A stretch of 62,754 bases of DNA, counting the filler, from Sluysia triapertura (Eukaryota): NCBI GenBank assembly GCA_046118255.1. It is 5 parts of 5 records of this genome, joined end to end, with 100 filler letters (N's around TTAATTAATTAA, not from the genome) between each part and the next. Parts side by side here need not be neighbours in the genome. Positions count along the whole stretch, not along the records: positions 1 to 11,523 come from JBJNIA010183768.1; 4 more parts are not named here. One strand, written 5' to 3'. A model generated the notes under the pieces. That model was not told the origin of the DNA, made no database searches, and saw only the letters and a list, made by a program, of their open reading frames with translations. Position numbers and translations under genes: made by a program. Of this stretch, positions 1-13,859 are shown in pieces. Numbering within the stretch: the stretch's first letter is position 1; each line of letters starts with the position of its first letter.

Positions 1-32
1 GTTTTTTTTGTACATAATTGTTTTTTTTAAAT

Positions 33-76
33 ATCAGAATTAATTTTTCCCCCCGGGGGGAAAAATTAATTCTGAT
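33..76. repeat. Perfect 44-bp palindrome
   Basis: ATCAGAATTAATTTTTCCCCCC followed directly by its reverse complement GGGGGGAAAAATTAATTCTGAT, with no loop. Confidence 0.95.
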
Positions 77-132
77 CCGTAAGGATTTGTGGGCTCTATT
101 TGTTTTTTGAAATGAAACAAATTTATTCATTT

Positions 133-245
133 TGTTAGACTTCATAAAATGGACTAACCGGGAATAGAACCTGACACCTCTCGCTTCACAGCTGCGCAGT
201 TTGATGCTCTGACCACTAACAATTTTATTTCACTATAGTCAATTA
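133..245 (-). repeat. tRNA-like repeat, copy 1 (5' end of the tRNA part deleted)
   Basis: Minus strand reads AGTGGTCAGAGCATC...GAGGTGTCAGGTTCTATTCCCGGTTAGTCCA-TTTTATGAAGTCTAACA. The tail is shared with 60621-60642 and the upstream flank with ~48824-48849. Confidence 0.8.
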
Positions 246-2334
246 TAGGTCCATACCCCAACAATTTTCAACGGTTTGGCAAATCAATTTAAATATTTAA
301 AATTATTATTTCTTTTGATATTAATTTAGAAATAACTTATTTTTCATTAAGTTTTATTTTCAACATTACTTTCATTTCGTATTTTATTAAATATTTTCTA
401 CCATGTTCATTTTTGAATCTATATAGATTCGTATATTCCAATACCCATGTAATAGATTCAAATAATTGTAAAAAATTTAGTATTGGATATTTTATTTTCA
501 AATTAAATCACTAAATTAAATAATTAAAATGCTATCTTAACTAATAAAAAATTGAAACTAAATGATATTCATAATAAAAGGGAATATTTAAAGATATATT
601 GAAAGTTATTACTTTTCCCTCATATTTCATAATAATTATCAAATTTGTCGAATAAAAGTCTCTAAAAGTTAATTATTTCTGAATTTTTAAAAGTATTTTT
701 GAAATAAGACAAATATTTTTAATAACAAAAATATCATTTTTATTACAGAGATATAGAAAATATTTCACAAATATTATAAAATAGTTTATCTTTAGTGTAA
801 TTATATAGAAATCAAGAAATAACAATATTTGTTGCATTAATTAGCAAGTAGTTAATTGGTTTAGTTAAGTTATTTTAATTTAATTAATGAAAAAAAGTGT
901 TATTTTTGAAAACTTTTGCCCAAAATAAATTTTCGTTTTATTATTTCAAATATTAATATTTGTTTTAATATTTGTTTGTGTCACGTTTTTATTTTATAAA
1001 TTGTTTATTTGACCTTATAATTTTCCGCTTTTAAACTTTTAAAATTCTTTTCCACTTTCATTAATTTAAAAAACAAATTACTTTTAGTATTATTTAAACA
1101 TCTTCTAACTATTAACCCAATTTTAATAAGAAAAATATTAAAATATAGTGAAACATTTAAAACATTTTCCTATGTTGATTCTAAAATGGTTACATAATTA
1201 TACATCATTACTTGCTATAATTTTAAGCATATAAAAATTTTCTATGCATATTCTACTATGGTTGGAAACAATGTTCTATAAAAAATATTCCAGCATCTAT
1301 TATTTATCGAATTATTACCTTTCCAGTTGCTAAAACTAGTCGGCAAGAGTTAACCCGTTGAACGTTACAAAAATTAAATTAATCATAACAATAATATTAT
1401 GACTATATCAAGGTTTAAAATGATTTTTAGAAAAATAATAAAAAAGTAAAACATTAACATGTAAATCAAATAGTTGTACTTTTGTAGTTACTGTTTTTAA
1501 GAATATTTTCATTTACAACTAAAACAAATATTGATTTAATTAAAACATTTGCTAATAAATGCACTGTTTTGTTATTTAATGAATTATACTTCAGTAACAT
1601 GTTAATTAGAAAACATAACAAAATGGATTTGATTACACAAACTGAAATGGAAATGGAAACTCAGAAGAAACCCACTACTTTTACAATTTCTCAGTCTTTC
1701 TATTGGAAAATTTATTTTCGTTGAATAAAAAGCCATCTTACTCAGGAAAAGTACGAATCCCTTATTTTTTAACCGATTAAAAAATTCCAAAAAATTAAAT
1801 TAACTTCAACTTGAAGTTTACAATAACTTAAAACTAAGTAGCGTTTATTTTTAATATTTTTATGGAGCATGTGATATGATTTCATTATTTTAACGGCTAT
1901 ATTTTATTTAAAAGTTGCAGCTATTAAAAAAAGATTAAAAATGTGGCCCAAAAATTGGACATTGGCGGATAATGGATTAAATCACATGCCTATAAAAACT
2001 TTACTTTAAAACCAAACTCTATAAATTTAGAACGTTATGAAAATAGAGCTTTTATTTAATTTAAAAAAATCTAATCTTCCTGATACTTTTTTTGTTAATA
2101 TGAACCTATAGTTATAATGGACTACTTACATAGTCTTCTTTTACATTAAGTATAACTTTTTTTTGCAATTTCTTTGAGGATTCAATTATTTTCTGTGTAA
2201 TCAATACTATACAAAAATAGACAATTTGAAAAAAATTAACTATGTATAAATCTAAATGAAGATAAATGAAAATCAACTAAAAATGGATCTTTCAAACATT
2301 CAAATTTATTAATTTGATTTGACTTTAAATAAAT

Positions 2335-2574
2335 TCAACCTTTGAAATCATTTTCAACTAATTTCAATGGTGGAATATATTTCACAGAACGGAATGATAA
2401 TGGTGCTGGTTGATGAGCATACGACGACATAGTATTGGGTTGTTGATAAAGATAATTGATGTCACTTTTAAATACAACAGTGCGTTGATCTGAAGTCGCG
2501 CGTTGATCTGAACTAATCAATTCCAGGCGATCAGTGTATGTTGGAGTATGTTGGTGACGGTGTTTGTAAATTGA

Positions 2575-2624
<50 letters not shown>

Positions 2625-3165
2625 CTTTCACTGTTTTTGCAAATTGAATCGTTGTTGAACATTGTTCTGTAGCTTTAATTAGTGATGAAGATCTATTGAT
2701 AGTTGACAATGGACTATTAAATTTCGTATACATATCTGAATATTCATTCGGTTTCAATGTATCATTTCGATAAATATCGTATGTATCAAAACAATTATTT
2801 GATGATTTATCCGGTATTGTATAATTATCTTTATTATGATCAATATTTTTTATTGCTTTAAAATTGTTCGATTTTCGACAATAAATAATAATCAAAACCA
2901 ATATTATAATAACAATCAATATAATAATTCCTAAAGTGATATTAAGCCATATTTCTTTACCAATATTATATCCAATTAAATGTTTCGAATCAGAATTAGC
3001 AGTTAATGGTTGTAATGACGATGTTAATGTTAAATCAGAATTGATATTAGTGTAATATTTATTACAAATCGATTGTATTTGTTGTTTTGGTAATTTACAA
3101 AATGTAGTAACACAAACCACAAAATTGTCTGGCAATCCCTTTACCTTTTTTAATGCTATTTCCAT
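2335..3165 (-). CDS. Single-pass membrane protein, probably the terminal exon of an FN3-containing receptor/adhesion protein
   Basis: 276-aa open frame in ORF-poor DNA. Hydrophobic stretch IWLNITLGIIILIVIIILVLIIIYC is followed by basic RK and a low-complexity tail with poly-Asn. N-terminal GLPDNFVVCV resembles the last strands of an FN3 domain. The frame stays open about 20 codons upstream (KNGTRFRVTLSQYYTYST), with a candidate TACCAG acceptor near 3207. Confidence 0.65.
2575..2624. repeat. (ATT)n microsatellite encoding poly-Asn
   Basis: Direct reading; lies in frame within ORF 2335-3165. Confidence 0.95.
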
Positions 3166-4059
3166 AGTTGAGTAAGTGTAATATTGAGATAACGTTACTC
3201 GAAATCTGGTACCATTTTTAACGATAATTTATGTTTTTTTTAATAAATAGTTAATTGTAATGCGAATAATAAAAAGTTTTATAAGGTTTATGAAAGTTTT
3301 GACAAGAAATAAGAATAAATTGAGATTTATAAAAACGAGCTAAACATTAAAATTAAGGTAACATAATTGGCAACAAAGTTATGTAATAATTTTATTATTG
3401 TATTATTATTTTAAAGAATTGCATTGGTTACTAATTTAAAATAATGATAAATTGGAAGTACTGAATATGTGTTGGCAATAAAAATGCAAAAACAATTTAT
3501 ACAGAATACACAGTAATAATAAACATAAGTAATAGGTTAAACATCGTTTATTATTTATATAACCAACTATAGATAAAATTAAAAATCACCGAAATATCGA
3601 AAAATAAAAATTTATTTTTAATATGAGCGTTTTCATGATAAGTACTAGTGCTTAATAATTTAATTTATTATCATCACTACTACTGTCACCATCACTACCA
3701 ACATCATAATTATAATAACAACAAGAAAAATACATAATATAGTATAATATAATATAGTATAATGCCGATGAACAAGTACAATTTGGTCTTTATATCTTAT
3801 CGATTGTTTGTTAGAATAAGATCTTGTTTACATTGAATTGAACCGGAAAGAGAAAAAAAGTAGAAAGATTTCTGACATAAATCAACTAATCGGAAAATTT
3901 GGTGAGTTGAACATTACATTATTCAATAATATGAAAAATATTCTGATGTCGATTTTGATGTTGAATGAATATATGTTGATTTTCTCGGTATTATTTAACG
4001 AGGTTTCTTTGAATTATTACCACTAGTAGTTCGAGATTTTGTCTAAATTATGTAGATAA

Positions 4060-4120
<61 letters not shown>

Positions 4121-4121
4121 T
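4060..4121. repeat. (AAT)n microsatellite
   Basis: Direct reading. Confidence 0.95.
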
Positions 4122-5999
4122 AAAATCATTATCATATTATTAATGATAAATTGAATAAAAATTTTTTAGAGGTTCTCAATTAATATTCTGGGCTGTGATT
4201 AATTGATTGCAAAACGATGATGAAGACAATGATGACAAAATATTGTTTTTTAAAACTTTTAAGAAGTGTTAACATGAATTAATTTTTTTATATTTAAATT
4301 AAAACAAGTTTATGTTTAATTTAAGTTTAAATTAATCAGCTCCAGTATTACAAAAATCAAATTACATACACTTCTATCGATTTTATTCTCATCAATTTTT
4401 TCAGTTAAGTATTTTTCAGTCCAGCTTAATTATAATTAGTTTCAGCAGTTTGATTCTTAGATTGACATTTTCTAAAAGTAATTTTTGCGTTTATTATAAA
4501 TGTCTACTTCATAATTGTACACCTTGACCATAAAATAAGTTAGATTTTAATATTCTTTTTACAATAAACTAATGTGAAAAATCTTCAAAAACGAAAAAGT
4601 TTTATTAAAATTTGATAAATCATTATTTTGCTTGACTATTTTATGATCTATTTTTGTGCATTTTGCATATAGTCAGATCTAACGATCATGAACTTTTTCG
4701 TTTGAGGTTTCTTAAAGAATAAGACCAGCAGATATGACGTAAGTCAAACATATGATTACCTAATAAATCATGAAATATATCAAAATGCTATGTTGAATTT
4801 AAAAATATTCTTATGTCTAAGTAATCGTTCTCTACTAAACTTAAAATGACTCTGGGTGCTTTCTTATGTCAACGAATTTGTATATTCTATATATAACGTA
4901 TTTTATATTCTATCTGTACTTACAACAATCAAACTGCAAGCTGAATAAATTGTTTTAATAAGTTCTTAGCTTTATCAATATATATTCTCACTTTCTACAG
5001 TAGTTCAAGCTACTTCAATTCGAAATTAATAGTTTAAGATCGTTTAGCAATTAATTTACTTTGAGAACTTTTTATTGTCTTGTTTTACAAATAATATTTA
5101 TATCTTAGAGTTATTATATGTAGAAACATGAGCTCGGGTACTCGTTCCGATAACCTGGAATGGAAACGCAAGAATAAGCTTTTATTTTGAAATTGACTTT
5201 TACGTTAATTAGTAAAAACGCGTTGACTCGATTTTACTTAATCAAGTATTATCGTTGATTATGAAATTCTCTTCAGTTAAATTAGACAAATGTTAACTTT
5301 ATTTTTCTTTGGGGCTCTATTTCCAAAAGAAGAACAAAAAATTAAATTCGAATATTTATTAAAACAAATACTTTATAAAACGGTAACGAAATAATAACAA
5401 CAAATAAAGTGATAATAAAATGCCAAGTATTTTAAATTAATAATTATGTTAACACAAATAATATTTTTTAATTAGTAAAATATTTAAATATATTTTTGTT
5501 TTAAAAGATTTTAAACTGAAATGCAATAAATACCACGGGGTATTGTCAACTGGAGGGATTACAAAATTCGACGCAAATCTGTAATTCAATTAGTAAAATT
5601 CTTCTATCTCTATTTTTATTTTTTTCTTGCGTTGATGTTGATATTTGTCAGTGGTATTTATATTCGAAATAATATTTAAGATGTAATTTGTAATAATATT
5701 TTGTAATATTTAGTATGTATTTTGTAGAGAAATAATAATATTTAAAAAATAATTCGTAGTCATGTTTGCAATTTGTAATAATATATAATTTGGTAGAAAA
5801 ATTTTAATAATAATTAACAAATGATAATAAAATACTTTGTAAATAATTTTATATGTTAGTACATAATTCATATTTTATAATTATTAATATTTATAAATTT
5901 CTTTCTATAATAATAATGTAATGTTGATAATGTAAATAATAATTTGTCAATATAGCTAATAATATAATGATAATTATTGTTTTCAGTCTAAACATTCAT

Positions 6000-6480
6000 A
6001 TTTTATTAAATTTTGATCACATATATTTATATTCAATCTTATTTTAATAAGCTTTTCTCGATTACAATGCTTTTAAATTTGAAGTAATTTTGATTGTACA
6101 TTATTCTTTCCGTCCTGCCCAATCTTTAATTTAGGTTGATTTCAATCGAAAACAATGTTATTAATCTTTAATTATATACTAATTTTATTCAATCTCAGTT
6201 TAATATAATTTTAACTTTTATATTGGAATAATTTTTACGTTCTTAAAATTTAATATTATATTGCCTTTATAGAATCTCATTTTAAAATGACTAATCATTT
6301 AATTTCAATTTAAAATTGGTTACTATTTGTTATTAAATTTCGAATTTATACTAACTCTATTAAATCTCATTTTAAATTAGTATAAAACATAATCTTAATG
6401 AAAATGATTTTAATTTTACTTTGAAATAAGTTTTAAAATTTAAATTAAATAAATTTTGGATTTAATTTGAAAACTTGGAA
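6000..6480 (+). repeat. Degenerate tandem repeat with an AATCT(C/T)A(T/G)TTT(T)AAA core
   Basis: Core recurs several times (about 6035, 6121, 6191, 6272, 6363, 6390). Similar arrays lie at 31500-31790 and 52490-52810. Confidence 0.55.
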
Positions 6481-8334
6481 ATTTAAAATAATTGAAAAAT
6501 GAAAAATTGAATATTATGTTACACTATCTTGTCTTTTCATAAAGACCCTGAGAACTGTATTTTCGTTAATTGTCATTCTGTTGAATTTTATTAAATTTTT
6601 ATAAATAAATAATTATTTTTTGAAGATATTTCATATGATTTATTGTAGTAATAAAATAATATCTAAAAAAACATCTAATCTACTATATGTATTTTTTAAA
6701 TATTTCTGATTTAAATGTTTGTTAATTAATACAAAAATGCAAAATGAAACGTCAATTAATATCTAAAGTACAAGTTATTTTATGATTACCTAATTTCTAG
6801 ATATTAATCTGAGCGATAAGTATTTGCGTTTATGGAAGTAAATTTTTAAACCTTATAAACTCATAATATACTTAAATAAATTTTTGTGACAAAATAAGGA
6901 TGATTACTTAAATATTTATATTAATGTTAAAATCTAAAATTTAAACCAAAGTAACTAAAGCTATACAAGAAATACCCTAAATTGAGTAATGAATGTTGCT
7001 CAAAATTGGTATCAAATGTTAATAAATAGAGATTTAAAACACGTCAACAGGTCTAAGCCTGAAAGGACTAAATCATTTGACATCCATAAAAATCCTCAAC
7101 AAAGCACAGTCATTAACAACAATATAAGGTTTTCACAATAGTAAATAAGCTTCAAATATACTGATGATTTAACGGAATCTTAAAATATTGTAGATTTGGA
7201 ATGCGTAAAATTATTCCAAAAAATCCACTAAAAGATTTTTCAAGCGAATTTTTATGATTGATGAAAAATAGGTTTATTTTAAACTCATGTTTAGTTAGGT
7301 GAAAATGATAATCTCCAGTCTGTTTATAGGTGTTTAGTGTGACTATGAAGGTATTGTAAAGTTATATAAAATTTATTTCTAAAGTTGTATAAAATTTAAC
7401 TATGTTTAATTATATTTTATTATTTATATTTATCTTTTATGATTTATGTATTTTGTAAAAAATTATAAATATTGTAAAAAATTAAAAATATTATTAAAAA
7501 TTATTATTACTTAAAAAATTATAATAAAAATTACGTCAAAAAAGTATAATTAAAATTAAAATAAGATAAAAAGAACATTCTCGAATTTAATTGTTTTACT
7601 AAATCAAAAAATTAATGTCTATTTATGACAGTTATTAATATAAAAACAGCAATTATTCATAAAGACATAAATTACAACGAAATAAATCACGAAAATAAAT
7701 TAGTTCGTGAAAATTCTACAAGTGATCAAAAAAGTTCTCAATTTATAATTATCAATTTGAAGACCAGCAACAATCTTTTCGATTATTTGTCATATAGCAG
7801 CAGATCACAATAAAGTGATTCAAGTAGTAAGTCTAAATTGATAGCTTTGCATACTCGAATAGAGTTATAAAATACCACTCAAAATATTTGTATTTCCGTT
7901 GGTCCTTAAGACCAATGACAAAATCCTGGTAAATTAATTAATATAAATTTTCACCGAGCCTATAGTAGACTAGGTCTTTCAAAAATAGTGTTATTATTTT
8001 GATTATTTTGTTAAATTAATTATATATTGAAGTAATATTTGTTATTATTCCTATCATATAAACATTTATTTTTATGTTATCATTATTATTATCGTATAGC
8101 TTATTTAGAATTGTAGATAATAAATATTTAAATTGTTTGTTATTTAGAGTATTGATCGTTTAAGCAATATACGTGGATGTTTAATATAAAATAAGTTTAT
8201 TATAAAACACGATATACTTTCGAATACTGATATTAAGACTGCTTGACTTAACTATCAATTTATTTCATTGAATTTACCGAATAATAGTTCACGTGTCTTG
8301 ACTTGTTTATCTTGAAAATTTAGAATATTAGCTG

Positions 8335-10490
8335 TGGTGGCCAACGTTTTTATTCAAAATTTAAATCATTTATACACATGAAAAATCACAATTCATAACA
8401 TCCCACGTTTCACTTTTCAGATTCATTAAAATTCCTTTACATTTTAAAGCATTTTAAACTCATAACTGTATAACATTAAACTTTTACTCAACATCTAAAA
8501 TCATCGAACGTATACTTTAAACGTTTAATCAAAACATTTCAAGTTCAAAATTGTTCAGCATTCAGTCATTAACATCATTGAAAAACATTAAAATTACATT
8601 TCAAAATTAACTTTAAAACATCAATAAATCAAAATGGAATTTCTTTTATCATCTTTAACCACGTTGTTATTTATAATTTTTACTGCACAAACTTCTTTCA
8701 TATTTCCTATCATATTCAAATAGAAGAGTAAGAAAATATGTTAAGAATTTTTAAGATTTTAAGAAACAGAATGTAATAAAGAATAAAGGAATTTATGCGA
8801 AAATTTTATTCAAACATTTTTAAAGAAAAGAAGATAAATGTAAAGTAAAGAATTTTATGTTTTAAAAGAATTTAAAAGAATTATTATTATTTATATTATG
8901 CTATTTTATTTTATTTATTGCCAATTTTAAGTCATTTTTATTATCATTATTATTATTATAATCATTATCATTAGTGCCATTAATTTTCATTACTGTTATT
9001 TAACATTGTGGCCTATCATAATTATGTGACAGTTTAATTAAAATCAATTTTGGCTATCTTGTTAACTGTCGACTAATGACAGTTGCTTAGTAAGTTACTA
9101 CATTTGTTATTTTATGCCTATTGGTCAGCCAACCATTTTGCAGAGCATTAGTTGAATATAATTAAAAATAAAATTGGTTAAAAATGGCAACACATAAAGC
9201 TAATCACATAACAACTAGTAATTAAAAAATCAAGTTAACTATTAAAATCACACCAATTTTGATTATTAAAAAATTTAGAGACCTCTCGGTATTCGTAATT
9301 TATTAAAAAGTTTAATGGTACATAATTAATGATCAAAATGAACCGTAAAGATTAATAGTCAATTCTAAAGGATTATTACTTCATTTAAAAATAAATCCTT
9401 CCGAAATTAAACATTTCATAATAAAAAAAAGTAAAAACGCATCTTGATAATCAATGTAAAATTTATATCATACCTCTCTGCCGATATGAAACCCAAACAA
9501 CAGATTTGGATCACTATTTTTTTGTAGAAAATTGATTTAGTTTTGCACATTTGATTGAGTCTATATTAAAAAATGATAATAGCGGCAACAAGCCAAAAAT
9601 ATCACTTATTTGTATATTTCAACAAATTCAAATTCTGCTTATAATACCATGAAATTATCTTGTTCGATCGACCCATCTACAAAATCGACAATAAATAATG
9701 TTACTAGTTCATCGTATTCCATGTTTCAATATTTTATTATTCTTTATTCAACAATATGTCCACAAACTCTGGTGCATCGAATTTCGACACACAAGCAGAA
9801 TGAATTCAATTGCAACTATAGTGAAATAATTTTTCCTAACTTATCGAAAGTCAATCAAATCGTATCGATACGTTGTTTAAGTTTACATATTATATATTCA
9901 ATGTTTAGTAAAGTTTTAAACATGTCAACGACATTTTTAGCAACGATTGAATTCGTAACCAGTGAAGCTAATAATCACAAACCTGTACTCGACTTGGACA
10001 GGTTATGTAGTTCTTATGCGACAAACACAATGACATCCCGTCAAAAGTATATCAAAAATGAATTTTACAAACGTGGGATTTGTATTTATGCCACCTTACC
10101 AGATGGAAAATGTTCCAAGTTCGGTCCAGATTGCAGATATGCACATAATAGCTTCGAGTTAGAACAATCAAATGAAGAACAGATCTTCTCGGATAATCTT
10201 AACCGAGTCATGAGCATCATTTACAGTTCAAATTTGGAACCGATTTATATATGGTAAACCAAGAAATATAAATCCTAATGACAATCTTAACTTTAAAGTA
10301 AATTTTTAGTTTTATAATACTTTTTATAAAATTTTCTCTTTAGTATCATGTTTTAGAAGCGGAGTTCGTAAGGTAACGTATTCCAACATGAACTGTTCTG
10401 GCCATCACATAAATTTAAAATTGACAATTTTAATCCATATTATAATATGTTTTGTGTATAATAAATGTATTAAAATTTATTTTTATCTTA
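8335..10490 (+). mobile_element. CCCH cassette, copy A (PBS-like motif, leader, promoter-like block, CCCH gene)
   Basis: TGGTGGCCAAC at 8335-8345. 8335-9100 aligns by eye with the reverse complement of 58449-57750, and the AATAAATGTA(T/A)TAAAATTTA 3' block (~10460-10488) matches ~56062-56024. Confidence 0.65.
9610..10257 (+). CDS. CCCH zinc-finger protein
   Basis: 215-aa ORF containing FYKRGICIYATLPDGKCSKFGPDCRYAHNSFELE (C-x9-C-x6-C-x3-H at 10081-10146), with a TIS11-like YK lead-in and EL tail. The true start is uncertain because the track start is TTG. Confidence 0.75.
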   Translation: MYISTNSNSAYNTMKLSCSIDPSTKSTINNVTSSSYSMFQYFIILYSTICPQTLVHRISTHKQNEFNCNYSEIIFPNLSKVNQIVSIRCLSLHIIYSMFSKVLNMSTTFLATIEFVTSEANNHKPVLDLDRLCSSYATNTMTSRQKYIKNEFYKRGICIYATLPDGKCSKFGPDCRYAHNSFELEQSNEEQIFSDNLNRVMSIIYSSNLEPIYIW

Positions 10491-11448
10491 CCTTTATAGA
10501 GTTCACAATAATAACAAATTAATAATTATTTTTATTTGTACAAATGCTTCTTTTAAAGTTAATTATTTAAATTTTATTAAGAAATTTATTAATGATAGAA
10601 TTATTATCAATGAAGACATTAATTTCAATGTAATTATTAAATTTAAATTCCATATCATAATTCATTCATTACGTACGCCATTCGTAAATCGTATATTGTA
10701 GACGGACTTTCTTAATCTATTTTGCTGCTTTAGTTAAGTTTAGGATATAAAACCACAGCAGTATTATGAAATTTTTCCTGATGGTAATAACACAAATTCT
10801 GATTAAGTAAAAAAATATCCTGTAATGGATATTACTAACGTTCCATAAAGCTGAACAATAGACTTCAATTCAAACCTAACAAAAAGTTTGATTATTAATG
10901 AAGTTTTATCGCACTCAGTTTATAGTTTAGATCATTTAATCAGATTTATGGAGTATTTTAGTGGTACTTGACCGTTCACTTCTTGTGACAGTCTGAAGCA
11001 GGTGAATTAAGTAAAAACACAAAGCGGTACAAAAATGGTATTTTAGATTTGACAGCTAAATGAGCAAGAATAATAGAACATAATGGAATGTATAACAAAT
11101 TTTAATACACATGAATCTCTTGTAAATTTGTTCTGAAATTTATTTCAAAAAATACAAATATTTATGATTCAAGTTAATATAAATTAATTTATTTGTTAAT
11201 TAATTTAAAATAAACAAAATAAATCGTCAATTAATATCTAATTATAATAAAATCCAACAGTGAAAATTAGCAAGCATCAAATTTTTAAATCATAGTTTAA
11301 AATTTATTTGTATAAAATCAAATTATTTCGTCAAATAATCACAAAACATACAAAAATGTGAATTTTAAAAAATTATAAAAAGTAGATTTAATGAATTATT
11401 TTTCAGTTTGAGATTTCACTATACCATGCAAATGACTTTAAAGCATGT

Positions 11449-11450
<2 letters not shown>

Positions 11451-11523
<73 letters not shown>

Positions 11524-11655
11524 NNNNNNNNNNNNNNNNNNNNNNNNNNNNNNNNNNNNNNNNNNNNTTAATTAATTAANNNNNNNNNNNNNNNNNNNNN
11601 NNNNNNNNNNNNNNNNNNNNNNNATAATTATAATAATAATAATAATAATAATAAT

Positions 11656-11692
<37 letters not shown>
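11451..11692. repeat. (AAT)n microsatellite interrupted by an assembly spacer
   Basis: AAT arrays on both sides of the 11524-11623 gap. Confidence 0.9.
11524..11623. other. Artificial contig spacer
   Basis: N44-TTAATTAATTAA-N44 (stop codons in all six frames). Confidence 0.98.
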
Positions 11693-11694
<2 letters not shown>

Positions 11695-13859
11695 TTTAAA
11701 CAATAATAATAGTGATAGTATGATAATACATGACAATAATTAAGGATTTATATTTTTCATAATAATAATAATTTCATAATAATAATAAAATTATTAATAA
11801 TAATAATTTTAATAAAATGATAATATAAGGATTTATATTGTCACATTAAATCGTGTAAGCGTAATCGATTATGTTTAATGATTCTTTTAAATTTATTAAT
11901 GACATTTAGATTATTTTTTTACTTTTTTGATTTATGCATTGTTTTAGTTTGTAAAGTATTACTGAAACTAATAATAATTTTTGGAGTTGTTTTATCATGT
12001 ATCATTATAATATGTCATTATATCACTGCAAGGAAATAATATATTTTACAATAAAGCTAAGGAAAATAGAAACCTACTTACTCTTTACCAGATAAAACAT
12101 AAAATTCAACTTCCAGTTATTAATCGAGTGAATTCACTATTAATTTTTTAATGCATTAAATATGTTTAAGCGAAATATTTATGTAATTTGCAATACAGCG
12201 GTCTCTAAGTTTTTGTTTAAATTTAACATTGCTTCAGTTAGTTACGATATTAGTACAATATTTTATTATTTTAACCCTTTCACAAAGATGGCTTCCAAAA
12301 AGTACGACATGATGAAGATTAAATGATTCTCATTTGGAGGCAGTGTTAAGAATAGCTGCTACAAGCATAGAACCAGGTATTAAAAATGTAACAATACTTT
12401 GCATTAGTTACTATGCTAATTTGATGTTTTGATTACTTACAATTATTTATTATAAAATTATTTACAATTATTTATAATAATAGTTTCTTAACATCTAAAT
12501 AAATAATTGTTTGCTTATTACCATTTTTAATTTCAAGATTTTTTCCGGCCCCTAAATTATTTTTTTTCCAATCCAGCCCGGGTTGTGCCTGTTTTACACT
12601 CTGTATTTTTATTATTCTCGAGTTTAACCAATCAAATTTCAGATAACTTTATTATATTTATAATAAATATTATTGAAATTATCTGTTTTGAAATTCTCAC
12701 ACATCGAAACAATTTAAACAAAGTTAAGATAAAATAAAAAAATTTGGTAAAGCATGAACTGTTCTTAAATGTGTACTTATCACAAACGTGCAAATAATAT
12801 GAACAAAACATGTGTTTACCAACACATAAAATATATTTCATTAACATATTTAGGTGAAATTTTTTAAATCATTTTTTTCATTACATTATTACTTTCAGTA
12901 GACTTTTGTTAAATTTCTTTAATTAATAATAGAAAGTTAAAAATCGTATTTAATTATATGATGATAATAATGCAAATGTAATGAAAACTGATTAATGTAT
13001 TCTTGCAACGTTTGTCTTTAATACGTCAGCTAATATATGCGACAAAAGTACTTGATTTTGAGCCTGGTGTGTGTTGCACTATTTTTTCGCAGTTAAAAAA
13101 TCCAATGCCATTTAAAGTCATTTCATAAGAAAAATTTCCATGGAATATGATATAATATTTTCTTCTCAAGTTCTGGTAGCGAACGTATAACAAAATTTAT
13201 CACGCATATATACGCACAGTGTGTCTAATAATTTCTTAATTTTTCAAATGTATTTTTAAAATATATAAGGTACGAATATTTATTTTCCTTTTGCGGACAT
13301 GTCATATACATTATTTTCATAATTTTCAACATCTAGTGCTACTAAGTAAGCAATAAATATGAATATTTTCCGCTGACAAAATTAACGCAACATCCATTAA
13401 TCTAAAAGCTATTTACCACGCAAAGGATCAAAAATGACTTTAACTCTCTATGGGCACATGCAACTTTCAGCTTATAAGCTAATATATCCACATTTTACCA
13501 AATAATTTTAGTTTTTTTCACAAGATGACGTATACAACTTATTTATATAATGCCTCTAAAATAACCAATAACATTATTGATCTAGTTGGTAGCATCATCA
13601 ATATGAAATGTCAAAATACATATTTTCTTATATTTAAGAAAAAAATTCGGCCCACAAAGGATTAACAAATTTGAAAATACAAGTAATAGAAAAATCAGAA
13701 CGCTTCGGGATAAAAGGACTATAGGATAAATATTAAAAGACTCAAGGGCTTTTGACACTTTTTCTGGGCATCATTTTTGTAAAATCTGATTTGTGAAACT
13801 CTAAATATTTTACTAAATAATGTTTTCATTTTAGAAATCACAAAAAGTAAAGGCTCCAT

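What the first reader, a model, noticed from the sequence alone, without database searches (positions are those of the whole stretch)
8335..10490. Dispersed family of PBS-headed cassettes carrying an atypically spaced CCCH zinc-finger gene
Seen in sequence: the motif TGGTG(G/A)CCAA(C/A) occurs at 8335(+), 31173(-), 44336(+) and 58449(-), on four different contigs. Each is followed on the same strand by an AC-rich leader and a CCCH or CCCH-like ORF. The two intact fingers (10081-10146; 56432-56367) share C-x9-C-x6-C-x3-H, and copy C keeps the x6/x3 half. Copies A and B are colinear in leader, promoter and poly(A) block although their proteins have diverged strongly. Copies C and D are short forms with the ORF close behind the motif. 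Established knowledge: TIS11/TTP fingers are C-x8-C-x5-C-x3-H RNA-binding modules, and LTR-element PBSs begin with TGG. Inference: this is a high-copy mobile-element family, possibly LTR-derived, that spreads a fast-evolving RNA-binding accessory gene, perhaps acting on element RNA or host silencing. No pol or transposase is linked to any copy here.
Basis: partly seen in the sequence, partly recalled or inferred. Interest (0 to 1): 0.85.

Follow-up and report, generated by a model that had tools for sequence, protein, structure and literature searches.

The report
LTR-like repeat carrying CCCH-finger gene
Window 8333-10673 is one decayed copy of a mobile DNA unit present in thousands of copies, with retrovirus-style ends, whose only gene encodes a lineage-specific protein with a single Unkempt-type RNA-binding zinc finger; the family is real and unusual in layout, but how it copies itself is unsettled.

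Summary
TGGTGGCCAAC at 8335 is followed by a G-poor stretch and a C-x9-C-x6-C-x3-H finger at 10081-10146. The motif occurs 8,087 times in the 619 Mb genome against 613 for a reversed control.

The motif is not a primer-binding site. It is the first bases of the element itself (TGTGGTGGCCAAC at 8333), and nothing upstream of it is conserved among copies.

The unit spans 8333-10673. It begins TGTGGTG and ends CATTACA (CATTACG in the window). Two of six complete copies have perfect 5-bp target duplications. This copy sits inside another LTR-like repeat whose uninterrupted copies serve as empty sites.

The gene is larger than reported. Open pieces in other copies tile about 445 codons, from an ATG at 9338 to the 3' terminus, and the window copy is broken. 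In-frame dN/dS is 0.53, against 0.86 and 0.67 in shifted frames. The finger core is the best-conserved coding part.

The spacing is not novel: it is that of Unkempt finger 3 (PDB 5elh, Pfam PF25427). The rest of the protein matched nothing.

No pol gene, paired copy, PBS or PPT was found next to any sampled copy, although integrase genes are abundant in the genome. The best reading is a long LTR, mostly solo, carrying an accessory gene. A self-contained unit moved in trans remains possible.

The parts
8333..10673 (+). One copy (2,341 bp) of the dispersed unit 'Y'. It starts TGTGGTGGCCAAC and ends CATTACG (CATTACA in other copies).
   Evidence: The boundaries come from the ends of genome-wide matches, from alignment of termini in more than 12 copies, from empty sites in paralogous copies of the surrounding repeat, and from contig loose ends at 8333.
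8333..8345 (+). 5' terminal signature TGTGGTGGCCAAC.
   Evidence: Genome count is 8,087 against 613 for the control. The same 13 nt heads an otherwise unrelated sequence at C37480:9668.
8333..8660 (+). Conserved G-poor 5' head (about 328 nt).
   Evidence: Median identity to other copies is 83%. Composition is C 18%, G 6%. The DNA search gave 1,934 first-look candidates. Summed contig depth is roughly 7-14 times that of the finger core at 80% likeness.
8661..9316 (+). Variable AT-rich spacer, differing between subfamilies. It includes a short separate repeat at about 9028-9092.
   Evidence: Only 4 copies align over half of it. Alignments break down after about 8670 and resume about 20 nt before the ATG. 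Loose ends at 9028 and 9092. Inverted copies.
9338..9355 (+). Position of the ancestral start codon (ATG 9338-9340). In this copy a premature TAA follows at 9353-9355.
   Evidence: Alignment of the region in 12 copies. The ATG is kept in about half of them, and an alternative in-frame ATG lies a few codons on in the others. Open frames start here in L033, L048 and L030.
9610..10257 (+). Longest open piece in the window copy: 215 codons including the finger, ending at TAA 10255-10257.
   Evidence: Pfam zf-CCCH_UNK PF25427, E=3.2e-8, 33.8 bits against a cut-off of 31.1.
10081..10146 (+). CCCH zinc finger, C-x9-C-x6-C-x3-H.
   Evidence: Aligns to Unkempt finger 3, PDB 5elh_A residues 86-128, E=6e-5, with identical spacing. 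The finger core (window 9933-10262) is the best-conserved coding segment, median 84.5%.
10258..10672 (+). Frame-shifted, stop-containing remnant of the C-terminal third of the ancestral ORF. It runs to the element's 3' terminus.
   Evidence: One frame covers the finger and this region in L010 (255 aa open) and L012 (294 aa). The region still matches at protein level between copies only 33-40% identical.
7355..8332 (+). 5' part of a different LTR-like repeat, 'X', that Y interrupts. X begins TGTAAAG. Its 4-bp target duplication GTAT is at 7351-7354.
10674..10760 (+). 3' part of repeat X, ending CACAGCA. The matching GTAT is at 10761-10764.
   Evidence: Uninterrupted X copies (L014, L015, L019, L020, L022) join 8332 to 10674 through about 15 nt that are absent from the window.

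Best explanation
Window 8333-10673 is an old, broken copy of a high-copy mobile unit of about 2.3-2.9 kb that was inserted by a retroviral-type (DDE) integrase. Most probably it is a long terminal repeat, now mostly present as solo LTRs, of an LTR-retrotransposon family whose LTR carries an accessory gene.

Layout (shown): a conserved G-poor head of about 330 nt that begins with the terminal signature TGTGGTGGCCAAC; a hypervariable AT-rich spacer; then an ORF of about 445 codons that reaches the 3' terminus (...CATTACA).

The protein (shown): lineage-specific, with one Unkempt-type CCCH finger.

The function (inferred): the protein binds single-stranded RNA, most plausibly the element's own transcript, for packaging, chaperoning, export or translation control. 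That would give copies with an intact gene a propagation advantage, and would explain why the finger stayed under purifying selection while the family split into many subfamilies.

Other shown points: the boundaries, the terminal structure, the target duplications, the copy number, the coding signal and the finger type.

Other inferred points: that the unit is an LTR of a larger element, and that integrase is supplied by the retroelements seen elsewhere in the genome.
For: Mobility and boundaries:
- Y interrupts repeat X, and five paralogous X copies are uninterrupted at that point. Joints skipping about 2.4-2.5 kb appear.
- Flanks are unrelated among copies. One 3' flank that was tested is single-copy.

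Integrase-type ends:
- 5'-TGTGGTG...CATTACA-3', that is TG...CA with a 5-of-7 inverted repeat, in more than 12 copies.
- 5-bp duplications are perfect in C197275 (ATTAT) and C230266 (AAGAT), perfect with a 1-nt shift in L005 (TATAC), and 3 of 5 in two others. The mean is 3.0 of 5 for own pairs against 1.33 for cross pairs, where no pair exceeds 3.

A source of integrase:
- The genome holds 981 first-look rve integrase candidates. All 150 scored exceed Pfam's cut-off, some in open frames of about 1,000-1,660 aa.
- The neighbouring repeat X has the same kind of ends with 4-bp duplications, and was likewise not seen next to an internal region in the sampled copies.

Copy number:
- The motif has 8,087 hits against 613 for the control.
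- The protein search gave 4,226 first-look candidates.

Coding signal:
- The longest forward open frame in the ORF half has a median of 149 aa and a maximum of 294. The reverse strand gives 63, and the 5' half gives 47 and 32.
- Overlapping open pieces tile about 445 codons.
- Pooled dN/dS is 0.53 in frame against 0.86 and 0.67 in shifted frames. It is lower for more diverged pairs.
- The finger spacing is kept in copies with only about 35% protein identity.

Finger type:
- Pfam PF25427 above its cut-off.
- Unkempt finger 3 in 5elh, with the same spacing.
Against: - No sampled copy is paired with a second copy. This covers eight contigs of 8-15 kb.
- None of about 15 3' ends or 17 5' ends abuts a shared internal region, a TGG-type PBS or a purine tract.
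- No open frame among 149 scored ORF matches exceeds 453 aa, so none is fused to pol.
- A gene filling 57% of an LTR and running to its last bases without a conserved stop is unusual.
- The head is several-fold more abundant than the ORF part. Many head-bearing elements must therefore have other bodies.
- In the window itself the insertion shows no clean duplication. About 15 nt of X are missing instead.
- The assembly is very fragmented, and I could fetch no further DNA. Absence of full-length elements is therefore weak evidence either way.
- RNA binding, expression and any role in propagation are untested.
Confidence: 0.45

Rival explanations
1. Y is a complete, self-contained, non-autonomous unit. 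It is not an LTR of anything larger. Its two short integrase-recognition ends let it be moved in trans by an integrase or an integrase-like transposase encoded elsewhere: either a retroelement integrase or a Ginger-type DNA transposase, whose ends also start TGTNR. Its own gene supplies a nucleic-acid-binding protein that favours its own copies.
For: Every sampled copy is a single unit. Target duplications flank the unit itself. No internal region, PBS or PPT was seen. The ORF has been kept through deep diversification, which suggests benefit in cis. Both termini fit TGTNR (the TGTNR rule for Ginger elements is from my own knowledge). Integrase genes are abundant.
Against: No mechanism is known that makes integration-competent DNA from a unit lacking LTRs, PBS and PPT. 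For a cut-and-paste element, a 7-bp imperfect terminal inverted repeat is very short. Solo LTRs look exactly the same, and a fragmented short-read assembly favours them. The ORF has no stop of its own before the 3' end, which is odd for a self-contained gene.
Confidence: 0.3
2. Y is an autonomous element of an undescribed kind. The ORF of about 445 codons is itself the enzyme that moves it, a very divergent DDE or other transposase with a zinc finger.
For: There is a single ORF of transposase-like size in a 2.3-2.9 kb unit with defined ends and a fixed 5-bp duplication. The ORF is conserved across very divergent subfamilies.
Against: Pfam recognises no catalytic domain; only the finger is hit. 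There were no homologues among 5.8 billion clustered or 1.84 billion representative proteins. The AlphaFold model is poor, mean pLDDT 49, and mostly helices or disorder. The N-terminal half is Ser/Thr/Asn-rich and weakly constrained. The finger is of a single-stranded-RNA-binding type.
Confidence: 0.07
3. Y is a non-LTR retroposon with a conserved 5' head that acts as an internal promoter, moved by a LINE in trans. This would resemble ORF1-only or SINE-like partners, or the trypanosomatid elements that all share the Pr77 head.
For: A conserved head is shared by elements with different bodies and is far more abundant than the body. The element carries a single RNA-binding-type ORF. The Pr77 analogy is from the abstract of PMC8190864 as listed.
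Against: There is no poly(A) or simple-repeat tail. The precise TG...CA ends and the fixed 5-bp duplications are not those of target-primed reverse transcription. The 5' end is the better-represented end, which is the opposite of the 5' truncation usual for such elements.
Confidence: 0.05
4. It is an ordinary host gene family for CCCH proteins, amplified by segmental or tandem duplication, and not a mobile element.
For: The protein carries a finger of a host type (Unkempt). Several copies have long open frames.
Against: The boundaries are sharp and identical in copies with unrelated flanks. Copies carry target duplications, and this one is inserted into another repeat that has empty paralogous sites. 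There are thousands of copies, mostly with stops and frameshifts.
Confidence: 0.03

Closest known systems
Solo LTRs and LTRs of Ty1/copia-, BEL- or Ty3/gypsy-type retrotransposons
   Same: TG...CA termini with a short imperfect inverted repeat, 5-bp target duplications, high copy number, many diverged single copies, and a genome rich in rve integrases.
   Different: At 2.3-2.9 kb it is long. More than half of it is an ORF under selection that reaches the last bases. No paired copies, PBS, PPT or gag-pol were seen.
LTR-borne accessory genes, e.g. the sag ORF in the U3 of the mouse mammary tumour virus LTR, and Ty1 GAG starting inside the 5' LTR (own knowledge, not checked here)
   Same: They are precedents for protein-coding sequence inside an LTR, and for an ORF that crosses the LTR's 3' edge.
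   Different: The proteins are unrelated. In those elements the LTR is demonstrably part of a gag-pol element, which is not shown here.
Unkempt (UNK) zinc finger 3; Pfam PF25427, PDB 5elh
   Same: The same C-x9-C-x6-C-x3-H spacing, and about half the residues across the finger are identical.
   Different: Unkempt has six fingers in two clusters plus a RING-like domain (own knowledge). This protein has one finger in an otherwise unmatched protein of about 445 aa.
TIS11/TTP tandem CCCH fingers
   Same: Same CCCH class; there is a weak match to TTP (1m9o, E=0.044).
   Different: TTP has C-x8-C-x5-C-x3-H spacing and tandem fingers. Pfam zf-CCCH PF00642 scores only 11.8 bits against a cut-off of 20.5.
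Coding non-autonomous retroelements (ORF1-only HAL1 of mammals; gag-bearing non-autonomous LTR elements), own knowledge
   Same: An element that keeps only a nucleic-acid-binding gene and relies on enzymes supplied in trans.
   Different: Those elements keep the full cis structures of their class (a poly(A) 3' end, or two LTRs). Y has neither.
Ginger-type DNA transposons (own knowledge)
   Same: Ends starting TGTNR, 4-5-bp duplications, and an integrase-related enzyme.
   Different: Ginger elements have terminal inverted repeats of tens to hundreds of bp and encode the transposase. Y has a 7-bp imperfect repeat and no such gene.

Membership tests
LTR of an LTR retrotransposon (including solo LTR) | Termini 5'-TG...CA-3' with a short inverted repeat | tested here: met
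   TGTGGTG...CATTACA in more than 12 copies; 5 of 7 positions complementary.
LTR of an LTR retrotransposon (including solo LTR) | Target-site duplication of fixed length, 4-6 bp | tested here: met
   The duplication is 5 bp. It is perfect in 2 of 6 complete copies, perfect with a 1-nt shift in a third, and 3 of 5 in two more. Own pairs average 3.0 against 1.33 for cross pairs. It is not met in the window copy itself, where about 15 nt of target are missing.
LTR of an LTR retrotransposon (including solo LTR) | Occurs as two direct copies flanking an internal region with PBS, gag-pol and PPT | tested here: inconclusive
   No pair on eight contigs of 8-15 kb. No shared internal flank, PBS or PPT at about 32 sampled ends. 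However, the assembly is fragmented, the sample is small, and no more DNA could be fetched.
   Nothing upstream of 8333 is conserved among copies. The motif is the element's own first bases.
   No tRNA gene was found in 22 loci scanned. The genome's tRNA set was not retrieved.
Unkempt-like CCCH finger (Pfam PF25427) | Profile match at Pfam's gathering score | tested here: met
   The window ORF scores 33.8 bits against a cut-off of 31.1, E=3.2e-8. L010 and L012 score 30.6 and 30.0, just under the cut-off.
Unkempt-like CCCH finger (Pfam PF25427) | C-x9-C-x6-C-x3-H spacing as in Unkempt finger 3 | tested here: met
   Alignment to 5elh_A residues 86-128. The same spacing occurs in 12 Y-type copies and 2 very divergent ORFs.
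Unkempt orthologue (whole protein) | Six CCCH fingers in two clusters plus a C-terminal RING-like domain | tested here: not met
   Only one finger was found, and no other Pfam domain in any open piece.
TIS11/TTP family | Tandem C-x8-C-x5-C-x3-H fingers | tested here: not met
   There is a single finger with x9/x6 spacing. PF00642 scores 11.8 bits against a cut-off of 20.5.
Terminal-inverted-repeat DNA transposon | Terminal inverted repeats of at least 10 bp and an encoded transposase | tested here: not met
   There is only a 7-bp imperfect repeat. No transposase domain was found. Two facing motifs in C37480 share nothing beyond 13 nt.
Non-LTR retroposon (LINE- or SINE-like) | A-rich or simple-repeat 3' tail, variable duplications, 5' truncation | tested here: not met
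   The 3' end is a fixed ...CATTACA, the duplications are a fixed 5 bp, and the 5' end is the more abundant end. No Rfam family matched the head.

The most novel reading that the evidence does not exclude
Y is a new kind of mobile unit: a single 'LTR-like' cassette with integrase-recognition ends that spreads on its own, without a second LTR, PBS, PPT or pol. It would carry its own promoter region and one RNA-binding gene, built around a finger borrowed from the host's Unkempt family, that favours its own propagation. It would be one of several bodies carried behind a shared 330-nt head.
Probability: 0.25. Interest if true: 0.8.

Novelty: new variant of a known kind. Interest (0 to 1): 0.5.

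Why it matters
If the unit is an LTR, it is a rare case of a large accessory gene, under selection, living inside an LTR. The gene is an RNA-binding protein built on a host-type finger, and it has spread to thousands of genomic sites.

If the unit moves by itself, it points to a way of moving gene cassettes with retroviral-type integrase that has not been described.

Either way it explains thousands of CCCH-finger ORFs that gene predictors would otherwise call as a huge, fast-evolving host gene family in this genome. It also gives exact boundaries for masking them.

Tried and rejected
- Word-based protein search with the window ORF found no candidate.
- A profile search of 1.84 billion representatives with an alignment of natural open pieces gave no hit at E<=0.001.
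- The ESM Atlas feature search gave no usable hit.
- AlphaFold on L012's 294-aa open piece with 24 related rows gave mean pLDDT 49 and pTM 0.27. That is too poor for a fold search, so none was run.
- Rfam on 7300-10800 gave only a chance SmY hit (E=0.31, 20 bits against a gathering score of 39).
- tRNA scan of 22 loci found none.
- Internal direct or inverted repeats in Y that could be hidden LTRs or TIRs: only AT-rich chance matches.
- Two facing terminal motifs in C37480, tested as possible long TIRs, share no similarity beyond the motif.
- L006's 3' flank begins TATGG and was tested as a possible PBS plus internal region. It is single-copy DNA.
- The hairpin idea for 9015-9105 gave z = -1.1, not notable.
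- RNA evidence: no RNA run holds the stretch.
- Three paper searches for TE-borne CCCH or Unkempt fingers, or coding non-autonomous LTR units, found nothing that describes this.
I did not try to read further flanks by other means.
Full report
**Setting.** The piece (1-11523) is contig C183768 of a 619 Mb assembly in 263,945 contigs. It is about 23% G+C throughout. Neighbouring loci carry protein kinase, peptidase M20 and Integrator subunit 2 fragments, so the organism is a eukaryote, probably an animal. Run and organism names were coded.

**Observation.** TGGTGGCCAAC is at 8335-8345 and occurs once, with 0.01 expected. Bases 8333-8660 are G-poor (G 6%, C 18%). The only sizeable open frame nearby is 9610-10257. 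It carries C-x9-C-x6-C-x3-H at 10081-10146. Genome-wide, TGGTGRCCAAM occurs 8,087 times against 613 for the reversed control.

**The unit and its boundaries.**
- Searching the genome with 8335-10490 gave 2,742 first-look candidates and dozens of 70-88% identical matches.
- Extending the query showed that similarity starts at 8333 and stops at about 10660-10673.
- The DNA on both sides belongs to another repeat, X. In five other X copies, window 8332 is joined to window 10674 through about 15 nt. Y is therefore an insertion into X, and these copies are paralogous empty sites.
- Contigs of a public run show the same: joints skip about 2.4-2.5 kb, and 38 loose ends with unrelated sequence lie before 8333.
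- Aligned termini of more than 12 copies begin TGTGGTGGCCAAC and end ...CATTACA, with unrelated flanks.
- Six copies have both ends. They are 2,341-2,857 bp long.

**Ends and target sites.**
- The ends are TG...CA with a 7-bp imperfect inverted repeat (TGTGGTG against the complement of CATTACA).
- Five-base duplications flank C197275 (ATTAT) and C230266 (AAGAT) perfectly, and L005 (TATAC) with a 1-nt shift. Two further copies match at 3 of 5.
- Own pairs average 3.0 matches against 1.33 for mismatched pairs, none of which exceeds 3. Given 12-30% divergence, this fits a fixed 5-bp duplication, the mark of a DDE integrase.
- The window copy is an exception. TTAGC and TACGC flank it, and about 15 nt of X are missing. 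I cannot explain this beyond an aberrant integration or a later microhomology deletion.
- X itself starts TGTAAAG, ends CACAGCA and has 4-bp duplications: GTAT in the window, GATT in L014.
- The genome has 981 first-look matches to the rve integrase domain. All 150 scored exceed the cut-off, some in open frames of about 1,000-1,660 aa.

**Why the motif is not a PBS.** A PBS follows a 5' LTR. Here the motif is the first bases of the unit. Nothing upstream is conserved, and the duplications lie directly outside it. The same 13 nt also heads an otherwise unrelated sequence at C37480:9668. That fits a terminal recognition sequence shared by several families.

**The gene.**
- The window's 215-codon frame is a fragment. 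In other copies, open frames of 100-294 aa overlap and tile one reading frame. It runs from an ATG corresponding to window 9338 to the 3' terminus, about 445 codons.
- L010 has the finger and the whole C-terminal third in one 255-aa frame. L012 has 294 aa open.
- No stop is conserved before the terminus. In five copies the frame reads on a few codons into the flank.
- The window copy has a TAA five codons after the ATG, and a frameshift after 10254.
- Coding is supported in three ways.
  1. The longest forward open frame in this half has a median of 149 aa. The reverse strand gives 63, and the 5' half gives 47 and 32.
  2. Pooled dN/dS is 0.53 in frame against 0.86 and 0.67 in the shifted frames of the same alignments, falling to 0.47 for the most diverged pairs. 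The signal is modest. That is expected when neutral decay after insertion is mixed with selection on master copies, and the control frames show that the method is biased in this AT-rich DNA.
  3. A protein search of the genome found 4,226 first-look candidates, with matches down to 28-35% identity that still cover the finger and often the C-terminal region.
- The finger keeps its four ligands and spacing in 12 Y-type copies and in two very divergent ORFs. One of these, L007:3212-3832(-), again matches PF25427.
- By segment, median identity to the window copy is 83% for the head, 75.5% for the N-terminal ORF, 84.5% for the finger core and 74.9% for the C-terminal ORF. The spacer is rarely alignable.

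**What the protein is.**
- Pfam finds only zf-CCCH_UNK (PF25427), above its cut-off for the window ORF and just below it for L010 and L012.
- Against solved structures, the best match is Unkempt, 5elh_A residues 86-128 (E=6e-5). The spacing is the same and about half the finger residues are identical. TTP is far weaker.
- The 'atypical' spacing is therefore that of a known finger for single-stranded RNA.
- The remainder matched nothing in any search and folded poorly.

**What kind of element.**
- The ends and duplications say integrase. The simplest reading is an LTR, seen mostly as solo LTRs.
- Against this, eight contigs of 8-15 kb each hold one copy only. About 32 sampled ends show no shared internal sequence, PBS or purine tract. 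One candidate flank is unique DNA. No ORF match sits in an open frame longer than 453 aa.
- With a solo fraction above 90%, and with an assembly that breaks at young repeats, this absence is not decisive. X shows the same picture.
- The alternative is a self-contained unit moved in trans. It fits the single-copy pattern and the long-term conservation of the gene, but it lacks a known way to make integration-ready DNA.
- The head is several-fold more abundant than the ORF part at comparable conservation. DNA search gave 1,934 first-look candidates for the head against 28 for the 3' end. Summed contig depth is about 6,000-12,000 for the head against about 870 for the finger core. The tool warns that depth is not copy number.
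- The head is therefore shared by elements with other bodies. About 17 of 21 ORF-bearing copies with enough upstream DNA have the head.

**Limits.**
- There are no RNA data.
All protein work used naturally open pieces.

**Verdict.** The finding is real. It is a high-copy mobile family with LTR-type ends, carrying a lineage-specific gene with an Unkempt-type finger. The PBS reading is wrong, the finger spacing is known, and the mode of propagation (LTR of a larger element, or an autonomous cassette) is open.

Noticed in passing
window 7355-8332 and 10674-10760: Repeat X is a second LTR-like family of about 1.1 kb. It starts TGTAAAG, ends CACAGCA, and has 4-bp target duplications (GTAT at 7351-7354 and 10761-10764; GATT in L014). 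No sampled copy was seen next to an internal region.
   Followed up: partly
window 8328-8337 and 10668-10680: The Y insertion into X shows no 5-bp duplication. Instead, about 15 nt present in five other X copies are missing. This is either an aberrant integration or a later deletion.
   Followed up: partly
window ~9028-9092: A short (about 55-65 nt) separate repeat lies inside the spacer. It occurs in both orientations in other contigs at 93-96% identity, with loose ends on both sides and locally raised contig depth. It has no notable hairpin.
   Followed up: partly
window 2335-3165 (-): A 276-aa ORF with one hydrophobic segment and a run of 17 asparagines. It has only sub-threshold Pfam matches. 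It may be a host membrane protein exon.
   Followed up: no
window 11457-11523; also 2575-2624 and 4045-4120: (AAT/ATT)n microsatellites. The same repeat ends many of the fetched contigs, which suggests that it breaks the assembly.
   Followed up: no
L007:3212-3832(-); L044:3787-4107(-); L044 ~1346-1485(+): These are very divergent ORFs. The first two have the same C-x9-C-x6-C-x3-H spacing, and L007's matches PF25427 at E=6e-4. The third is only a weak, frame-shifted tblastn match to the finger region. The finger family is much wider and older than the Y family.
   Followed up: partly
L044/L052 (contig C37480) position 9668(+): The 13-nt terminal signature (TGTAGTGGCCAAC) heads a sequence otherwise unrelated to Y's head. 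A 238-aa ORF without Pfam match lies 2 kb downstream.
   Followed up: partly
genome-wide: There are 981 first-look matches to the rve integrase domain, some in open frames of about 1,000-1,660 aa. Apparently intact LTR-retroelement or integrase-bearing genes exist in this genome.
   Followed up: no
window 8332-8647 and 9284-9537 in run X2: A run labelled as a different organism (B) holds contigs matching the head at roughly 85-95%. One 254-nt contig matches 9284-9537 with only 2 differences. This could be a relative, the same species under another label, or carry-over.
   Followed up: no
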